DNA of 36,384 nucleotides, from NCBI GenBank assembly GCA_000388065.2, contig KB932202.1, one strand, 5' to 3'. Both the position numbers and the translations under genes were made by a program. Below, piece after piece: positions 3,001 to 29,909 of this stretch (within the stretch, counting starts at the first letter, position 1; each line of letters starts with the position of its first letter). The notes beneath the pieces were generated by a model. It was not told where the DNA came from. It did no database searches and was given only the letters and a program-made list of their open reading frames with translations. Origin of the DNA: Fonticula alba ATCC 38817. Taxonomy: Eukaryota > Protista > Nucleariida.

Positions 3001-6000
3001 AGCCGGCCCTGGTCGCTGACCCTCTCCCTGCGGGGCATGCTCCGGCATGCTGGCCGCCTCGACGAGTGGATCCTCCTGCCGCTGGTGTGCCTGCTGTCGG
3101 TGCTGTACGAGCTCCGGACCGGGCGCCTGGTGGCCGCGCTGCCGGGCCTCCCGCCGCTGTGCGTTCCGCTCCCCTCTCCCCCCCTCCCCCGTATTTGCTC
3201 CCACTGCCGCCCCCCCGCCCCCCTGACACGCTGCTCACCNNNNNNNNNNNNNNNNNNNNNNNNNNNNNNNNNNNNNNNNNNNNNNNNNNNNNNNNNNNNN
3301 NNNNNNNNNNNNNNNNNNNNNNNNNNNNNNNNNNNNNNNNNNNNNNNNNNNNNNNNNNNNNNNNNNNNNNNNNNNNNNNNNNNNNNNNNNNNNNNNNNNN
3401 NNNNNNNNNNNNNNNNNNNNNNNNCCGCCCCCGCCCCCGCCCCGGCCTCCAGTGCCGTGCACATCCTGCTCAGCATGCTCGTCCTGCGCATGCTCCGGTC
3501 GTCCTTCGGCAATCTCTCGGCCCGCAGCCACTACATCATGCTCCTGGCGCTGCTGCTGTACCTGCCGTCGGTGAGCTTCCTGGCCGGCTCGCAGCCCACC
3601 CCGGCCGACCAGCTGTTCGGCATCCCCTACCTCTTCCCGAGGTCGGTGCGCGCCATGGCCCCGGTCGTGGTGGCCTCCTTCCCCATGACCTACTCGGTGT
3701 GCCAGCTGGTCATGACCTTCTTCTGGCGCTTCAGCGACAACATCTACATCTCGCTGCAGCTGTCCAGCTTCTCGCAGCTGAGCTTCCTCCACCTGCTGGC
3801 GCTGCCGATCTTCTCCGTGGGTGCGTCGGTCCCTCGACACGCGCCTCCCCCCTTCCCAGTGCTTGGGGTGTTGGCTTTTTGTTTTGTCTTCCTCCGCCCC
3901 CGCGGGGGCCTGGGCCGGTCTCCCCTCTCTAATCCTCGTCCCCCCCCCCACGACTCCCCTGCAGCCTCCTCTTCTACGGTCTTCTGCGCCCTGCTGTCGG
4001 TCATCTTCTTCGATGCCCCCTTCGCCGCCGTGCGCGGGCTCTTCCTGTATAAGGTCCTGCACCCTCGGCCGGAGCGCTTCTGGGAGGCCAATCGGGTGAT
4101 CCCCCCCCGGACCCATCTGGCCGCCTTGCGGGGCGTCTGCAGCGGGGCCCAGGGCTACGACCCGCGGCCGGCCTCCCAGCAGGCCATCAGCCTCAACAAC
4201 CCGGCGGCCTCCTGGACTTCGGAGACCTTCTACTCGGACCTGACGTACAACTTCGACGAGTTCACCTACTCGCTGATTGCCTTCGAGCTGGCCAAGGACG
4301 GGCGGCTGGGCCGTCTGCTGCGCAACATCCCGGCCCCGGGCCAGCCGACCGCCCTCGGCACCGGCGGTGTCTTCAACCAGGTGGTCGGCGGGGACATCCT
4401 GCTCATGCACAATGACAATGTGCGTTGCTCTTGTGGTGTGGCGGCCGGCTGTCGTCGGCCTGTTTGGCCGGGGCCCCGCGCACGGCNNNNNNNNNNNNNN
4501 NNNNNNNNNNNNNNNNNNNNNNNNNNNNNNNNNNNNNNNNNNNNNNCCCGCCCCCGATGGAGCAGTACTCCTTCCTGGTGCACATCATCCACATCTCCGA
4601 CCGGCACATCTCCTTCCAAATCCGCGGCCTGGAGACCGTGGGCACGGTGTGCCACTCGTCCGAAATTTCGTCGCTCGACTCGTCCATCGCCTCGGCCTCG
4701 CCCACCATCAATGTCGACAACCGGTCGCGGTACACCTACCTGCCGGGGCTGCGGCTGTATGTGCTGCGCGATGGGGACGGGAGCTTCCAGCTGGCCGAGC
4801 GGGACAACATCTCGGTTTTGTCCAAGAGCTGGACCCCCCTGTCGGTGGACACGGTCAGCATCCCCATCTACTCGATCAGCAGCATGCCCAGCAGCGGCTT
4901 GCTGACTTCCTACGACAGCAAGCAGGTCCTCCACCGGTACATCGCCATGAGCATCATCTACCTCCTGGCGACCCCCTTCTTCCGGCCGCTGCTCCGGGCA
5001 TGCATCGAGGCCTCCCGGGCCCCGACGCCCGGGGCCAAGTGCATGTGCATGCATGCGGCCCAGCGGCGGGGGAAGGCACACCGGCGGAAGGCCCCCTCGG
5101 GCCGTGCCACCACGGTGGCCACCATGCCCGAGGCGGTCAGCCCGGCCAGTGGCATTCCCGGCCCGGCGGAGCTGCTGGGCCCGGCCCGCCAGGCGCCGGC
5201 CGCCGCCCCCCCCCGGGACCTGCTCAACACCCCGGTCGATGTGTCGGACTCCGAGCTGCCGGAGGACGCCCCGGCGGCCGGCCCACTCGCCGGCGACCTG
5301 TCGGACATCGAGGCCGATCGCGATGACGAGGACCATGATGAGCACCTGCCGCACGACCTGCCCGAGGAGGCCGGGGCTTCGCCTGCCGGTGCGGCCGATG
5401 GCGGCCTCAGTGAGGCGGATCTGCTGGCGCCGGCCCGGCCGGCCGGCGGCAGCAGCAGCAACGGCAGCCCGCCACGCAGCCGGGCCGGCTCCATCGGCTC
5501 CTCGAGCAGCAAGGCCGGCGATTCGGCGGGCGATTCGGTGGCCGCGGCCACGGCGGCCGCCAGCCCGGCGGCCCAGCCCCCGGCCAAGACGCGCTTCGCC
5601 TCGCGCGCTGGGCTGCCCCCGGCGGCGCCCTTCTCGGCGCACTACGCTCGCGAGGTGTTCCACCGGCTGCCCTCGCCCTTCCTCAGTGGCTTCATGGAGT
5701 CGGTGGATGTGGAGTACCGGACCGCGCGCAAGCGCAAGGCCACCATCCCGGCCGAGCTGCTGGTCCAGCAGCCGGAGGCTGACGGTGCTGCGGCGGCCAC
5801 CGGCGGCGGCGGCGGCGGCGGCGGCCCCTGCGCCTCGTGCCGCGAGGCGCGCAATCGCCACCTGCGCGAGCAGCCGGTCCCCCTGGTCCGGTTCCTGGCC
5901 GTGCATGGTCCCTTCATCGCCGAGTGCCTGGAGCGCTCGGCACAGGCATGCGCCGAGGCCGGGCCCGGCGACGGCCTGGACGACATCACGGCCTTCGACC

Positions 6001-24974: not shown

Positions 24975-25474
24975 ACCGTGCGCGCACCCACCTCTCCAGG
25001 CCGCCTTGGAGATGGGCCTCCCCCTGCTGCGCCCCTCCCTTGCTCTCTCTCTCTCTCTCTCCCTCTCTCCCTCGCTCTCTCTCTAGCGAGGGTGCCTCCC
25101 CGCGCCGGCGGCCGGCGACCGGACGGCTCCGGCACCGCAAAAGGCCACCAGATCGCTGCCGCCCCGACCGCCTGCCCATCGGCAGTCAACATCCCCCCCT
25201 CCCCCTCCCCCCNNNNNNNNNNNNNNNNNNNNNNNNNNNNNNNNNNNNNNNNNNNNNNNNNNNNNNNNNNNNNNNNNNNNNNNNNNNNNNNNNNNNNNNN
25301 NNNNNNNNNNNNNNNNNNNNNNCGCCGCCCATCGTCGTTCCCCTGTCCGCGCAGCGACCGTTGCTCTGCCCCTCCCCCCTCCCCGCCGCCCTTCCCTGGC
25401 CCCTCCTCTTGCCGCGCTCGCGCCCCTGACAGAGAGCCCGCTTCCGGCGCCTCTGTGCCTGAACCGCCTCGGCC

Positions 25475-26039
25475 ATGGTACGCTCACGCCATCCTTCGGG
25501 CCCCCCGCGCCCCGTCCCTCCGTGTGGCCTCCTGCGCCGAGGGGCCGGGCCCCGGGAAGGCATCTGCTCGCGCTTTTTCCGCCGCTTCGCCCGGTCGCCC
25601 GCTAACCCGGTGGGCTCCGCCTCGCATGCGCCTCCGCCTCCACCGCCGCCCCCGAACAGTCACGCATCTTTGCCCAGGTGGCCGTCCAGGCCGTCACCAT
25701 CGCGCTCAAGGGCTTCGTCCATGCCTACCGGAATGCCACCATGAGTGCGTGCCGCCGCCCTGTCCGGCCCCTTTCCCTGCGCCCCCTCGCTCCGCTGCTC
25801 ACCACCATGCCTGCCCCATGCGACTCGCAGCCGGTGGTGCTGCCGCCGCCGCCGCCGCGTCGGCCGCTTCCTCCCGGCTGGAACGAAACCCCGAGGAGTC
25901 CTTCTTCGCCCCGGGCAGGATGCCCATCGCCCAGGCATACCAGGTCCTTGGGATCAATGCGTCCATCCCGATCGAGGAGTTCCGTCAAGTGCGTTCCCAC
26001 CGGCCGCGCCCTCGGCCAGGGCCCCTCTCCCTGCCTGCC

Positions 26040-26086
<47 letters not shown>

Positions 26087-29000
26087 CCGCCGGTGCTCGT
26101 CCACTAATCACAGCTCCCTGCCTCTGGCGCATGGTCGCGCGCGCGCACACACACACACACACACACAGAGATACACGGAGCTCTACATCGCCAACTCCCC
26201 GGCCCTCGGCGGGAGTCCCTTCATGCACCGGATGATCCAGGAGGCCAAGGATCGCGTGGAGCTGGAGTGGGAATTCCGCATGGACCCGCGCCACGACTTC
26301 TGCCCGATCCCCGCGCCGGAGGTCTACGGCAGCGATGACGAAGACAACGAGGAGGGCATCAGCGACTTCGAGAGCGACGTCGAGGAGTACGACCCCAACT
26401 TCAAGGTGGCCCCGGATCCGAATGATCCGGAGAGCGCCGCGGAGGCTGGCGCGGCCGGGGCCGGCGCCGGCGCCGCCGCTGCTGCTGGCACCGCTGCCGG
26501 CGCCGCCGCCGCCACCGCCGCCGGCACCGCTCGCGACGAGAAGAAGCCCGGCTCCGAGGACTCGAAGACGGCCGGCCCCGACGCCGAGGCCGAGGCCGAG
26601 GCCCAGAAGCGCTTCGACCAGAAGAAGAAGAAGAAGAAGAGCCGCATCGGGTTTGACCTGCCCAACTTCATGGAAAACCGGACCGGCTACGTGCAGCAGG
26701 GCATGGACACCATGCACAAGTCCTTCGACCGGATGGTCCCCCACAAGGAGGCCCCCCTGGACCTGACCCTGCCATGGGTGCACCTGACCCCGGAGTATGA
26801 GGAGCTGCGGCAGCGGCGCGCCGAGGCCCGGGAGGACCTGGCGCCGATGTCGCGCTTCCAGCCGGAGGGCGGCCTGGACAGTGTGGAGGAGCCCTCGGTC
26901 ACGGCGGAGCTCCTGGTCAATGAGCTGTCCTGCGACAAGCTGGCCACCGACATGGGCATCGACCTGGAGAACCCGGAGCAGTCGCCGGTGCTGGTGGCCC
27001 GGCTGCGCCAGAGCATGGATCTCTTTGTGCCGGAGGACCAGCTCGATGACACGCCCATCGATGAGGCGCTGCTGGATTCGCCGGAGTTCCTGCACGCCGC
27101 CGCCCAGGCCGACTTGACCCCCCTGCTGGATCTCCTGTCGGAGGAGGAGCGCCAGGCCATGGCCGGCAAGTCCCCGGTCGAGATGCTGCGGGCCTTCCTG
27201 GCGGATCCGGCCGTGCGGGCCGGCCTGCTCGGGACGAGCACCGACGACGCGACCGCCGCCGCCGTGGCCGCCGTGGCCGCTTCCGCCGCCGCCGCCGCCA
27301 CCGCCGCCACCCCCTCCAAGGATGCCCCGGCCACGGACGCCGGCAAGCCGGGCCCCGAGCCGGGCCCCGGGCAGGATATGCAAAAGTCCGGCGCTGGCCG
27401 CCGCCGGCGCATGGGCTCCGCCTCCAGCACCCCCAAGCGCCAGGCCACGAAGCTGATGGAGCCGAGCGAGGTGCTGGCCGAGACCGACCGGTACTTCGAG
27501 TCCCTCGACCGGCTCCGGGCCAAGACCCAGGTCGAGCGGTCCGAGGCCACCAAGCAGGCCTTCCGCGAGGCGGCCGCCTCGAAGCTGGACGGCTTCGATG
27601 TGGTGTCGGCCACGGCGGCCGAGCGTGACGACGCGCCGGCCAGCCGGACCGGCCGCGGTGCCAGCTTCCGCCGGCAGGAGGTCCTGGCCCGGAAGCTGGT
27701 GGCCACCTTTGAGGAGCATGGCCTGCGGCGGATTTCCCTCAACGGAGCGTATGTCCTGGCGCAGGCGTGCGAAATGTACTACCGGCAGAAGCACGGCTCC
27801 CGCCGGGGCATGCTCGGCGCCCGGGGCCAAAAGCACACCTCCATGCCGCTGGCCTTCATGCCGCCCGGCATGGAAGCCCTGCCGGGGCTGGTGGCCAATC
27901 TCCTGACCGACGAGCATGTGACCATGTTCGGGACCTCCTTCAACATGGGCACCCTCGGGCAGGACGATCGCAACATCACGCAGGGGGTCTTCCGGCCGCG
28001 CGAGGTGGACTACCTGTCCAGGAGCACGGACATCGCCAATTGGCAGCCCTGCCGCTACCCGGGCGAGGACACCGAGTATGCGGTCATGACGTTGCACTAT
28101 GTGCGCGAGTATTTGTCCCTGGTGAAGCCGTACCTGGACCTGGCGGCTCGGCCGCCGGCCAGCGAGGACCAGCTCCACCGGATCCTGCACGAGCTGGAGC
28201 TCCTGCAGCTGCGCATGATCAACCGCTACCAGACCAGCCCGTCGATGATCGGGCCGCTGACCCCGGGCCAGGCCAAGTCCCTGGGGCGTTTGGTGGACCA
28301 GCTGCCGGAGCTGCTGGGCATGCATCCTCGTGGCCTGACCGTGCTCAAGTCGCTGAATTTGGCTCCCCGGGCGCCGATCGGCCTGTCCATGCGCATCCTC
28401 CGGGCCTACATGCGCACGGTCAACCGCTACCAGCGGATGTTCGCCAATGCGGAGTTCATGCCGCTCATCTTCTCGCACATCCCCCCGAAGGACCTGGAAT
28501 CGGCCATGCGTGCCCTGGCCCGGACCCACCATTGGGTGTACCCGGAGGACACGCCCCTGTCCGTCGGCCTGATGCGGCACATTGCCGAGCAGTGCGATGA
28601 GCTGGTCGAGAAGGCCCCGCGCCCCTTCGAGTATGGCCCGTCGGAGGAGAGCCTGGCGGAAATGTTCCCGCCCGATGTGGACCGCATGATGTTCGAGTTC
28701 ATCCGGCCGCTCGAGTGGCGTGGGGAGTTCACGCGTACCGACTCGCTGCGGCTCCACAGCCGGGCCCTGTGTCGGGTGGACTTCGAGCAGGTGGAGGCCC
28801 TGGTCGACCAGCTGGCCCTGCTGAGCTCGCACCTGGCCGTCGAGCCGCCGGCCGATCAGTATGTGGAGCGTGTCATTTCCCGCTTCGAGGCCATGGCGGC
28901 CGATGCCCGCGGCGGGGACTTCGCCTGGAAGGTTCGCCTGGATGAGGAGGGCCTCCCGGAGGACCCGGAGTGGGAGGCCCTGCTGGGTGACGATGAGATC

Positions 29001-29177
29001 CTCAAGGTGCCGATCTTCGACGACCTGCCCATCCTCACGGAGGAGGACCTCTTCGAGTCGGAGCCCTTCCAGTCCGGCGAGGAGCTCACCCCGGAGGAGA
29101 TCCGCGACATGCCGGAGGCCTTCCGCCCGAAGCCCAAGCCCAAGAAGGCCGAGGACGGGGCCATCTTCATGTTCTAA
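25475..29177 (+). CDS. PAM16: Pam16/Tim16 (MAGMAS)-like J-like N-terminal domain fused to a ~950-aa uncharacterised extension, 1084 aa. Exons 25475-25477 (ATG only), 25660-25744, 25831-25988, 26169-29177
   Basis: The spliced N-terminus M|SRIFAQVAVQAVTIALKGFVHAYRNA matches Pam16 N-termini (cf. MAHRAFIQVIITGTQVFGKAFAEAYRQA). It is followed by GRMPIAQAYQVLGINASIPIEEFRQ|RYTELYIANSPALGGSPFMHRMIQEAKDRVELEW, a J-like fold with no HPD motif. The frame then stays open for 3009 nt to TAA at 29175-29177, with no gap. Donors are GTACGC at 25478 and GTGCGT at 25745 and 25989. The symbol refers to the N-terminal domain only. Confidence 0.8.
26043..26085 (+). repeat. Poly-C homopolymer (43 nt) in an intron of the Pam16-like gene
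   Basis: Read directly. It is the longest of many C/G runs in the window. Homopolymer length may be inaccurate in the assembly. Confidence 0.8.
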
Positions 29178-29909
29178 AGGGGGTGCGTGCTGCTGGGCGA
29201 TGATGCTGCCGTGCGCGCGTGCGTGCGTGCGTGCGTGCGTCTGGCCATGTCGCCCGACGAAGCCCGGAAGGAGAACGACAGAGAGAGAGAGAAAGGGGCG
29301 GGGGGGGGGCAAGATCCAACGACCGGCAGACCCCCGGGAGAAGAGCGACCAAAGGTCCGGCACATCGAGAGACAGGGGGAGAGAGAGAGAGAGAGCCAGC
29401 CCCGGGGAGTGGCCGTCGTATTTGTGCCGACACACGAGGCAGATGTTGCTGCATCGGGCGAAGGGGGCCATCCCCTGTTCTGCTCTCTGTCTTTCCCTCT
29501 TCCTGCCCCCGGGCTCTCTGTGTGTTTCTCCTGCCCTGGCTCTGGTCGCGCGTCCTGCGCGCGAAATACCCGCACGCCGCCCTTGGCCCGCCCTCCTCGC
29601 CCCCCTGTGTCCTTGCCACCATTTCTCCCACTCCCCGGCCGGGGCGGGGTCGTGTGCGGCGCCGTGGCCCTTTTTTGCTCTCCCCCCCCCCCCTCTCTCT
29701 CTCTCTCTCTCTGTCCCGCCTCGTCCAACTCCCTACTCTTTTCTTTCTCTCTTTCCTTCTCCCTCTGTTTGTTTGCTTCGGTGGGGCGTTCCCCTTAGAC
29801 ATACGCCCTCCTCGCGGCTCCTCCTCCGTGGGAGGGCGTGTACGCCCCCACCTCGCCTCCCCCCCCCACCCCCCCCCCTCCTCACCTCCATACACACTCG
29901 CCGACCCCT

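What the first reader, a model, noticed from the sequence alone, without database searches (positions are those of the whole stretch)
25475..29177. Pam16-like import-motor domain fused to a ~950-aa unknown polypeptide
Seen: a Pam16-type N-terminal segment and J-like domain (~130 aa) continue without a stop, intron or assembly gap into ~950 more residues. These comprise an acidic stretch (SDDEDNEEGISDFESDVEEYD), an Ala-rich linker, a Lys6 tract, a helical region and a complex ~400-aa block that looks folded (~27660-28900), ending in an acidic tail. Established: canonical Pam16/MAGMAS is ~125-150 aa and partners Pam18 at the TIM23 motor. In trypanosomes Pam16/Pam18 were repurposed for mitochondrial (maxicircle) DNA replication. 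Inference: this is either a giant import-motor subunit carrying a new matrix-side module, or a repurposed paralogue that tethers an unknown activity to the inner membrane. This is the best candidate for an undescribed system in the window.
Basis: partly seen in the sequence, partly recalled or inferred. Interest (0 to 1): 0.75.

Follow-up and report, generated by a model that had tools for sequence, protein, structure and literature searches.

The report
Giant Pam16 with orphan 960-residue tail
The amoeba Fonticula alba really makes one spliced mRNA for a protein about eight times longer than usual, in which the small mitochondrial import-motor subunit Pam16 runs on into 960 residues that resemble no other known protein, and what that added part does is still unknown.

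Summary
The window is Fonticula alba. The gene at 25475-29177 (+) is GenBank H696_01455, a 1084-aa "hypothetical protein". Splicing four exons from the window reproduces it exactly.

Assembled RNA contigs from two samples of one study carry all three introns removed. They then run colinear with the genome from the J-like domain to beyond the stop, so this is neither an assembly chimera nor two separate genes. Third-position GC is 0.86-1.0 along the whole extension and about 0.65 after the stop.

Residues 3-121 are a Pam16/Tim16-type module:
- Pfam PF03656 scores above its cut-off.
- HPD is replaced by SPA, and GGS is kept.
- There is an N-terminal hydrophobic segment.

Residues 125-1084 have no detectable relative. 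An exhaustive HMMER search of 1.84 billion proteins, a word search, metagenome contigs, Pfam, NCBIfam, PDB and the ESM Atlas all returned nothing. Single-sequence structure models were too poor to name a fold; they only suggest helices.

I could not search the rest of the genome for a second, short Pam16. A third reading is a composite precursor cut at an Arg-rich segment (aa 486-512).

It is a new variant of a known kind, of moderate interest. It is not described in the searchable literature.

The parts
25330..25474 (+). 5' UTR (at least). The RNA contig runs 59 nt further upstream, into the assembly gap 25213-25322.
   Evidence: X1 record 1 positions 3702-3848 lie on 25330-25476, and the record holds 59 more letters; no ATG in 25323-25474.
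25475..25477 (+). Start codon. This is the only coding part of exon 1 and is followed at once by the intron 1 donor (ATG|GTACGC).
   Evidence: (joint 25476/25659, GT..AG, cut +1).
25478..25659 (+). Intron 1, 182 nt, GT..AG.
   Evidence: table 5 (seen in all four runs).
25660..25744 (+). Exon 2, aa 2-30: Pam16-type N-terminal hydrophobic/amphipathic segment (SRIFAQVAVQAVTIALKGFVHAYRNA).
   Evidence: aa 1-57 alone hit Pfam Pam16 profile positions 4-47 (17.4 bits).
25745..25830 (+). Intron 2, 86 nt, GT..AG.
   Evidence: the record has 40 letters where the genome has 126..
25831..25988 (+). Exon 3, aa 30-82: Ala-rich linker and first helices of the J-like domain.
25989..26168 (+). Intron 3, 180 nt, GT..AG. 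It is in frame and stop-free, and holds a C43 run (26043-26085) and a (CA)11 repeat (26146-26167).
   Evidence: the record has 12 letters where the genome has 192..
26169..26285 (+). Start of exon 4, aa 83-121: rest of the J-like domain. The HPD position reads S92-P93-A94, GGS is at 96-98, and M101 sits at the position of yeast Pam16 L97.
   Evidence: Feature definitions from PMC3174187.
26295..26657 (+). aa 125-245: acidic stretch, Ala/Gly-rich low-complexity linker, K6 tract. pI 4.3; probably disordered.
26658..27242 (+). aa 246-440: acidic, Leu-rich region (net charge -22) predicted helical. No family or fold match.
   Evidence: (pLDDT 56).
27243..27467 (+). aa 441-515: Ala/Pro-rich linker. 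It holds an acid-free segment with 8 basic residues, aa 486-512 (27378-27458), which is presequence-like in composition but only weakly amphipathic.
27468..28922 (+). aa 516-1000: the complex block, which looks folded and is predicted all-helical. It has no internal repeats and no relatives.
28923..29177 (+). aa 1001-1084: acidic tail (net -16) ending KKAEDGAIFMF. Stop codon at 29175-29177.
29178..29364 (+). 3' UTR (at least). The contig holds 261 more letters beyond a (GA)n repeat.

Best explanation
This is one real, expressed Fonticula alba gene (H696_01455) for a 119.7-kDa acidic protein.

Shown:
- The first ~121 residues are a Pam16/Tim16-type module: an N-terminal hydrophobic segment, a linker and a J-like domain without HPD.
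- That module is joined in a single spliced mRNA to a 960-residue extension that has been a coding sequence for a long time.
- The extension has no detectable relative anywhere that could be searched.

Inferred mechanism:
- The Pam16 module takes the protein to the matrix face of the mitochondrial inner membrane.
- There its J-like domain pairs with the J-domain of Pam18, as canonical Pam16 does.
- The C-terminus of Pam16 points into the matrix, so the extension would be a matrix-exposed appendage held at the TIM23 import motor or at the inner membrane. It would consist of two flexible low-complexity linkers, an acidic helical region and a ~480-aa helical block.
- It would recruit a lineage-specific partner or activity to that site.

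The most probable origin is fusion of an ancestral short PAM16 with downstream coding sequence, the low-complexity linkers being former non-coding spacer.
For: - Gene and protein identity.
- Single spliced RNA contig over the whole CDS in two samples.
- Codon periodicity through the whole extension, lost after the stop.
- Pam16 assignment: Pfam PF03656 at 36.9/43.4 bits against a cut-off of 30.3. Both halves hit only Pam16 and there is no DnaJ hit. The 29 nearest ESM Atlas clusters are Tim16, 124-151 aa, score 0.91.
- HPD is replaced by SPA with GGS kept.
- Canonical organisation (membrane-association segment, targeting region, J-like domain, and a C-terminal extension that is dispensable in yeast): PMC2838536.
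- No relatives of the extension.
Against: - Localisation, Pam18 binding and the fate of the extension are untested.
- It is unknown whether Fonticula also has a normal short Pam16. If it does, a motor role for this protein is less likely.
- The residue at the position of yeast L97, which is needed for the Pam16-Pam18 contact, is Met rather than Leu.
- The closest solved structure by sequence is Tim14/Pam18, not Tim16.
- A 106-kDa extension with net charge -54 would have to be imported behind an uncleaved Pam16-type signal.
- With no relatives, there is no evidence that selection maintains the fusion as such.
Confidence: 0.45

Rival explanations
1. Composite mitochondrial precursor. The long protein is imported and then cut by the mitochondrial processing peptidase in a linker. 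This releases a Pam16-containing piece and a free matrix protein of ~570-600 aa, as happens with Arg5,6, Atp25 and Rsm22-Cox11.
For: - An acid-free 27-aa segment with 8 Arg/Lys and many Ser/Thr (aa 486-512) sits in the Ala/Pro-rich linker just before the folded block. It begins with Met and contains RRRRM|GS, which fits an R-2 type site (the motif reading is my inference).
- Known mitochondrial polyproteins carry an internal presequence-like segment and an MPP motif exactly at their junctions (PMC8734313; PMC5063612).
Against: - The segment has a low helical hydrophobic moment (0.1-0.5).
- Acid-free runs of this length are expected about once by chance in a protein of this size and composition (my estimate).
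- No targeting or cleavage predictor could be run.
- No known Pam16 is made this way.
Confidence: 0.2
2. Repurposed paralogue. Fonticula has a separate, ordinary short Pam16 for import. This long protein uses a Pam16-derived module only as an inner-membrane or Pam18-like anchor for another process, as TbPam16/TbPam18 were repurposed for maxicircle replication in trypanosomes.
For: - The module is divergent: word searches with aa 1-125 found nothing even at E<=10.
- Met replaces the contact Leu.
- The helix III motif GGSPF..IQEAKD is closer to Pam18.
- There is a precedent for repurposing (PMC11349236).
Against: - No second Pam16 has been seen, though none could be looked for.
- The module still passes the curated Pam16 threshold and keeps all three parts of the canonical organisation.
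Confidence: 0.2
3. The working product is a short Pam16 made from a minor isoform (alternative splicing, internal polyadenylation or early termination), and/or the C-terminal part is made separately from an internal start. On this reading the full-length fusion is a by-product.
For: - Contigs keep only the dominant path and cannot exclude rare isoforms (tool caveat).
- Contig depth is lower over the 5' part than the 3' part in X3/X4 (8.7 and 3.5-11.9 against 15). That could reflect extra 3' transcripts or simply 3' bias.
Against: - In all four runs, every contig listed (68 more rows were not shown) is colinear through 26169-29364.
- There is no excess of 5' coverage that would mark an abundant short form.
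- No in-frame stop exists for a short form without a frame-shifting splice.
Confidence: 0.08
4. Artefact: an assembly chimera, or an annotation that reads through non-coding DNA in a genome poor in stop codons.
For: Stop-free frames are common here: there is a 1248-aa antisense ORF and a mechanical sense ORF of 1409 aa. An N-run lies 150 nt upstream of the start.
Against: - Independent RNA contigs cross every junction.
- Codon periodicity is strong only in this frame and stops at the stop codon.
- Second-position GC of ~0.4 is that of a real protein, not of translated 70%-GC DNA.
Confidence: 0.02

Closest known systems
Pam16/Tim16 (yeast Pam16, human MAGMAS/PAM16), the J-like subunit of the TIM23 presequence translocase-associated motor
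   Same: N-terminal hydrophobic segment, linker and a J-like domain lacking HPD but keeping GGS. It passes the Pfam PF03656 cut-off, and its nearest language-model neighbours are Tim16 clusters.
   Different: 1084 aa against ~125-150 aa. The yeast C-terminal extension is ~30 aa and dispensable (PMC2838536), whereas here it is 960 aa with folded-looking parts. Met stands at the position of the contact Leu, and helix III is more Pam18-like.
Pam18/Tim14 (DNAJC19-type J proteins)
   Same: It is the best solved-structure match: 2guz_A, E 2.8e-4 over aa 59-113, sharing the motifs AN-x-P-x-x-GGSPF and I-x-EAKD.
   Different: The catalytic HPD is SPA, so stimulation of Hsp70 is not expected. There is no Pfam DnaJ hit at E<=10. 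The N-terminal segment carries Gln/Lys and is not a clear transmembrane helix (mean hydropathy 0.74 over aa 1-40).
TbPam16/TbPam18 of Trypanosoma brucei (PMC11349236)
   Same: J-like Pam modules whose sequences have departed from the import-motor consensus. They set the precedent that such modules can serve a process other than import.
   Different: The trypanosome proteins are small, integral membrane proteins with separate partners (MaRF11). Here an unknown polypeptide is covalently attached. No functional data exist for Fonticula.
Composite mitochondrial precursors (Arg5,6; Atp25; Rsm22-Cox11) processed by MPP at internal sites (PMC8734313, PMC5063612)
   Same: Two unrelated modules in one precursor, with a basic, acid-free segment in the linker before the second module.
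   Different: Cleavage here is only a conjecture. The first module lacks a classical cleavable presequence, and the junction segment is weakly amphipathic.

Membership tests
Pam16/Tim16 (Pfam PF03656) | Sequence match to the family profile above the curated threshold | tested here: met
   36.9 bits (whole protein) and 43.4 bits (aa 1-140) against a cut-off of 30.3, covering profile positions 4-114 of 127. The halves aa 1-57 and 55-125 each hit only Pam16. The nearest 29 ESM Atlas clusters are Tim16.
Pam16/Tim16 (Pfam PF03656) | Degenerate J-domain: HPD tripeptide absent, GGS of the helix II-III linker kept (PMC3174187 Fig S6 legend) | tested here: met
   S92-P93-A94 stands where Tim14 has H-P-D, followed by L95-G96-G97-S98 (alignment; sequence).
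Pam16/Tim16 (Pfam PF03656) | Conserved Leu (yeast L97), three residues after GGS, that stabilises the Pam16-Pam18 heterodimer | tested here: inconclusive
   The position is M101 (GGSPFM). This is a conservative change whose effect on binding is unknown.
Pam16/Tim16 (Pfam PF03656) | N-terminal hydrophobic segment for association with the TIM23 translocon | tested here: met
   aa 4-25 (IFAQVAVQAVTIALKGFVHAYR) match Pam16 profile positions 4-47. Association itself was not tested.
Pam16/Tim16 (Pfam PF03656) | Small size (~125-150 aa), single-module protein | tested here: not met
   1084 aa. The nearest Tim16 clusters are 124-151 aa.
Pam16/Tim16 (Pfam PF03656) | Mitochondrial matrix-side location, heterodimer with Pam18, and a role in presequence import | not testable with these tools
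   This needs fractionation, pull-down or yeast complementation. Fonticula Pam18 could not be retrieved.
Pam18/Tim14 (J-domain, Pfam PF00226) | Intact HPD motif and a match to the DnaJ profile | tested here: not met
   HPD is replaced by SPA, and there is no PF00226 hit at E<=10, although 2guz_A is the best PDB match.
Composite mitochondrial precursor cut by MPP | Internal presequence-like segment with an MPP motif at the junction of the two modules (PMC8734313) | tested here: inconclusive
   The acid-free, Arg-rich aa 486-512 lie in the linker, but with a low hydrophobic moment. No predictor or cleavage assay was available.
Any known family for aa 125-1084 | Detectable sequence or fold similarity | tested here: not met
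   - Only self in 1.84e9 representatives and in the word search.
- Nothing in metagenome contigs, Pfam at E<=10, NCBIfam, PDB sequences or the ESM Atlas.
- Models of pLDDT 35.5 and 56 gave no fold match.

The most novel reading that the evidence does not exclude
H696_01455 is the only Pam16 of Fonticula alba and works in the TIM23 import motor as an intact 120-kDa subunit. Its orphan matrix-side module would physically couple protein import to a second matrix process, such as assembly, mitochondrial gene expression or quality control. That would be a new architecture for an otherwise invariant motor.
Probability: 0.15. Interest if true: 0.7.

Novelty: new variant of a known kind. Interest (0 to 1): 0.42.

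Why it matters
Pam16 is one of the most uniform small subunits of the mitochondrial import motor across eukaryotes. A version carrying a 106-kDa appendage would show one of two things. Either the motor tolerates and perhaps uses a large matrix-side module, or Pam16 modules are reused as inner-membrane tethers outside trypanosomes too. It also offers a handle on an orphan protein: if the Pam16 module does take it to the matrix face of the inner membrane, that fixes where the orphan part would act. The caveat is that this is one gene in one poorly sampled lineage. Other notes of this scan, which I did not check, report further J-proteins of the same genome running on into orphan sequence. The fusion may therefore reflect a general tendency of this stop-poor genome rather than a special system.

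Tried and rejected
Searches for relatives of the extension, all blank:
- Word-based search with exon-4 residues 480-960: only self.
- Exhaustive HMMER with aa 125-1084: only self.
- Metagenome contigs with aa 580-1010: 109 pattern hits, none confirmed.
- Pfam at E<=1 and E<=10 on the whole protein and on six pieces, NCBIfam and PDB sequences: no credible family. The few hits listed were weak (E>=0.02, far below their curated cut-offs) and mostly fell on low-complexity stretches.
- ESM Atlas by features for aa 600-1040 and 240-445: no usable hit.

Structure:
- AlphaFold2 without an alignment gave pLDDT 35.5 for aa 600-1084 and 56 for aa 246-445.
- Foldseek against PDB and the Atlas shape search on the second model gave only E>0.5 and TM<0.4.
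- Self-BLAST of aa 241-1084 found no internal repeats.

Looking for a second Fonticula Pam16 or long Pam16 fusions:
- Word searches with aa 1-125 returned nothing even at E<=10. One search was a parameter slip.
- No tool here searches the rest of this eukaryotic genome.
- The scan's notes hold nothing under Pam16, Pam18, Tim23 or Tim44.

Literature: no paper holds Fonticula together with Pam16, or the locus tag.

Rejected readings:
- The antisense 1248-aa ORF as a gene. Its first codon position carries the GC3 signal of the sense frame, and the introns are GT..AG on the + strand.
- Assembly chimera.
- An ordinary long DnaJ family.

Full report
**What is there**

The window is from Fonticula alba. 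A protein search with part of the long frame returned one protein at 100% identity: P0001, GenBank H696_01455, "hypothetical protein". UniRef names it "J domain-containing protein". It is 1084 aa, with Pfam PF03656 precomputed, and lies on a 3.9-Mb contig.

I rebuilt the coding sequence from the window as four exons: 25475-25477, 25660-25744, 25831-25988 and 26169-29177. Its translation equals P0001 residue for residue. The three introns are 182, 86 and 180 nt, and all are GT..AG.

**Is it more than chance?**

A long stop-free frame means little in this ~70% GC genome. The mechanical ORF on the sense strand is 1409 aa, and the antisense strand carries a 1248-aa stop-free ORF over the same DNA. 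Two independent lines show that the extension is truly coding and truly joined to the Pam16 part.

- Codon periodicity. Along all of exon 4 the GC content at codon positions 1, 2 and 3 is about 0.6-0.8, 0.3-0.58 (0.76 in the Ala-rich stretch at 27249-27398) and 0.86-1.0. It flattens to about 0.75/0.55/0.66 right after the stop. Second-position GC near 0.4 is what real proteins give, not translated GC-rich spacer.
- RNA contigs. Four public runs of 2012 (two samples, one study) hold 83-86% of the sampled words of 25330-29400. Laid on the window, X1 record 1 (3907 nt) and X2 record 3 cover 25330-25476, 25659-25744, 25871-25988, 26181-26568, 26650-27245 and 27320-29364.

The record positions between those pieces account exactly for exonic letters that the tool masked as repeats (40, 12, 81 and 74 letters). 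They leave out exactly 182, 86 and 180 genomic letters. So the contigs are spliced RNA. All three introns are removed, and nothing else is skipped between the J-like domain and 187 nt past the stop.

In the second sample the same path is covered by overlapping contigs. This excludes an assembly chimera and two separately spliced genes as the main form. Contigs cannot exclude rare isoforms.

**The N-terminal module**

- Residues 3-121 match Pfam Pam16 above the curated cut-off: 36.9 bits in the whole protein and 43.4 bits for aa 1-140, against 30.3.
- Each half alone (aa 1-57 and aa 55-125) hits Pam16 and no other credible family. No DnaJ hit appears even at E<=10.
- By language-model features, the 29 nearest ESM Atlas clusters are Tim16/Pam16 clusters of 124-151 aa (score 0.91). 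DnaJ-type clusters follow at 0.79 or lower.
- The features that define Pam16 (PMC3174187; PMC2838536) are mostly present. The N-terminal hydrophobic segment is at aa 4-25. S92-P93-A94 stands where Pam18 has HPD. GGS is at 96-98.
- The Leu that stabilises the Pam16-Pam18 dimer in yeast (L97) is Met101 here.
- The only solved-structure match by sequence is yeast Tim14/Pam18 (2guz_A, E 2.8e-4, aa 59-113). It shares GGSPF and EAKD, and Tim16 of the same entry is not matched even at E<=10.

I therefore file the module as Pam16-type, with a helix III that looks Pam18-like. Word searches with aa 1-125 found nothing at all, which shows how divergent it is.

**The extension (aa 125-1084; 106 kDa, pI 4.8, net charge -54)**

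| Residues | Character |
|---|---|
| 125-245 | Acidic stretch, Ala/Gly-rich low complexity, K6 tract |
| 246-440 | Acidic, Leu-rich region predicted helical |
| 441-515 | Ala/Pro-rich linker with an acid-free, Arg-rich segment at aa 486-512 |
| 516-1000 | Block with ordinary protein composition, predicted all-helical, no internal repeats |
| 1001-1084 | Acidic tail |

None of it has a detectable relative:
- An exhaustive HMMER search of 1.84 billion cluster representatives returned only the protein itself.
- The word search and metagenome contigs found nothing.
- Pfam on six pieces at E<=10, NCBIfam and PDB sequences gave no credible family, only a few weak hits on low-complexity stretches.
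- The ESM Atlas gave no usable hit.

Without an alignment, AlphaFold2 gave pLDDT 35.5 for aa 600-1084 and 56 for aa 246-445. The fold searches on the latter were at noise level. The fold is therefore unresolved. This is a limit of the method, not evidence of a new fold.

The absence of relatives should be read with care. Very few genomes exist from Fonticula's kin, and I could not verify which of them are in the libraries.

**How it most likely works**

Shown: one mRNA, one frame, a Pam16-type module at the front and a long-standing coding extension behind it.

Inferred from what is established for Pam16 (PMC2838536; PMC3174187):
- The N-terminal segment and adjoining region direct the protein to the matrix face of the inner membrane.
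- The J-like domain pairs with Pam18.
- The C-terminus points into the matrix.

On that basis the extension would be a matrix-exposed appendage on flexible linkers, tethered at the TIM23 motor or at least at the inner membrane. I give this about 0.45.

Three rivals remain:
- Composite precursor cut by MPP in a linker (0.2). The acid-free aa 486-512, with 8 basic residues and an RRRRM|GS motif, sits just before the folded block. Known mitochondrial polyproteins have exactly such junction segments (PMC8734313). Against this, the segment is weakly amphipathic, and acid-free runs of this length are expected about once by chance.
- Repurposed paralogue beside an ordinary short Pam16 (0.2). The trypanosome precedent is real (PMC11349236). 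I could not search the rest of the genome, so this stands or falls on a simple HMM search that I could not run.
- Minor short or internal isoforms as the working products (0.08). Artefact gets 0.02.

**Context**

The neighbours are unrelated: a Methyltransf_16 protein, an unknown 272-aa protein and kinases.

Two unchecked notes of this scan report other Fonticula J-proteins joined to extra sequence. One is a mitochondrial DnaJ that can run on into a 242-residue orphan. The other is a J-domain fused to PPR repeats. I did not test them. If true, they suggest that appending modules to J-proteins, or to genes in general in this stop-poor genome, is recurrent. That tempers how special this case is.

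**Novelty and verdict**

The protein is in public databases as a hypothetical protein with the Pam16 domain already flagged. No searchable paper mentions Fonticula with Pam16, or the locus tag.

- It is a new variant of a known kind: a Pam16-type protein about eight times the usual size with an orphan extension.
- Interest is moderate at 0.42. It is unusual for a very uniform family and would give the orphan protein a predicted place of action. Against that, it is a single species, with no conservation evidence and no function yet.

Noticed in passing
window 25475-25479: The start codon is the only coding part of the first exon. ATG is followed at once by the donor GTACGC of a 182-nt intron, and this splice is confirmed in all four RNA runs.
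   Followed up: partly
window 25989-26168: Intron 3 is 180 nt, in frame and free of stops. It holds an uninterrupted C43 run (26043-26085) and a (CA)11 repeat. If retained it would add 60 residues without breaking the frame.
   Followed up: partly
window 25725-29471 (- strand): A 1248-aa stop-free antisense ORF lies over the whole gene. Its first codon position coincides with the sense third position, so it is a by-product of extreme GC3 and not a gene.
   Followed up: yes
window 27855: All four RNA runs read A where the genome has T. This is the first position of codon 645, changing TTC (Phe) to ATC (Ile). It could be a strain difference, an assembly error or editing; no DNA run was compared.
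   Followed up: no
window 25213-25322: This assembly gap (110 N) lies in or just upstream of the 5' UTR. The RNA contig X1 record 1 extends 59 nt beyond 25330 and could fill part of it.
   Followed up: no
window 26418-26553: Summed contig depth jumps to 124-200 here, against ~12-17 elsewhere. Other transcripts' contigs share the GC-rich Ala-coding repeat, and many loose ends start at 26477-26530. Such Ala-tract repeats appear to be shared by several transcripts in these runs.
   Followed up: no
window 26178-26285 (aa 86-121): The J-like domain's helix II-III region (AN-SPA-L-GGSPF...IQEAKD) is closer to Pam18/Tim14 than to Tim16 in the PDB search, although profile and language-model searches both say Pam16. 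A Pam16/Pam18 tree was not possible because no homologue sequences could be retrieved.
   Followed up: partly
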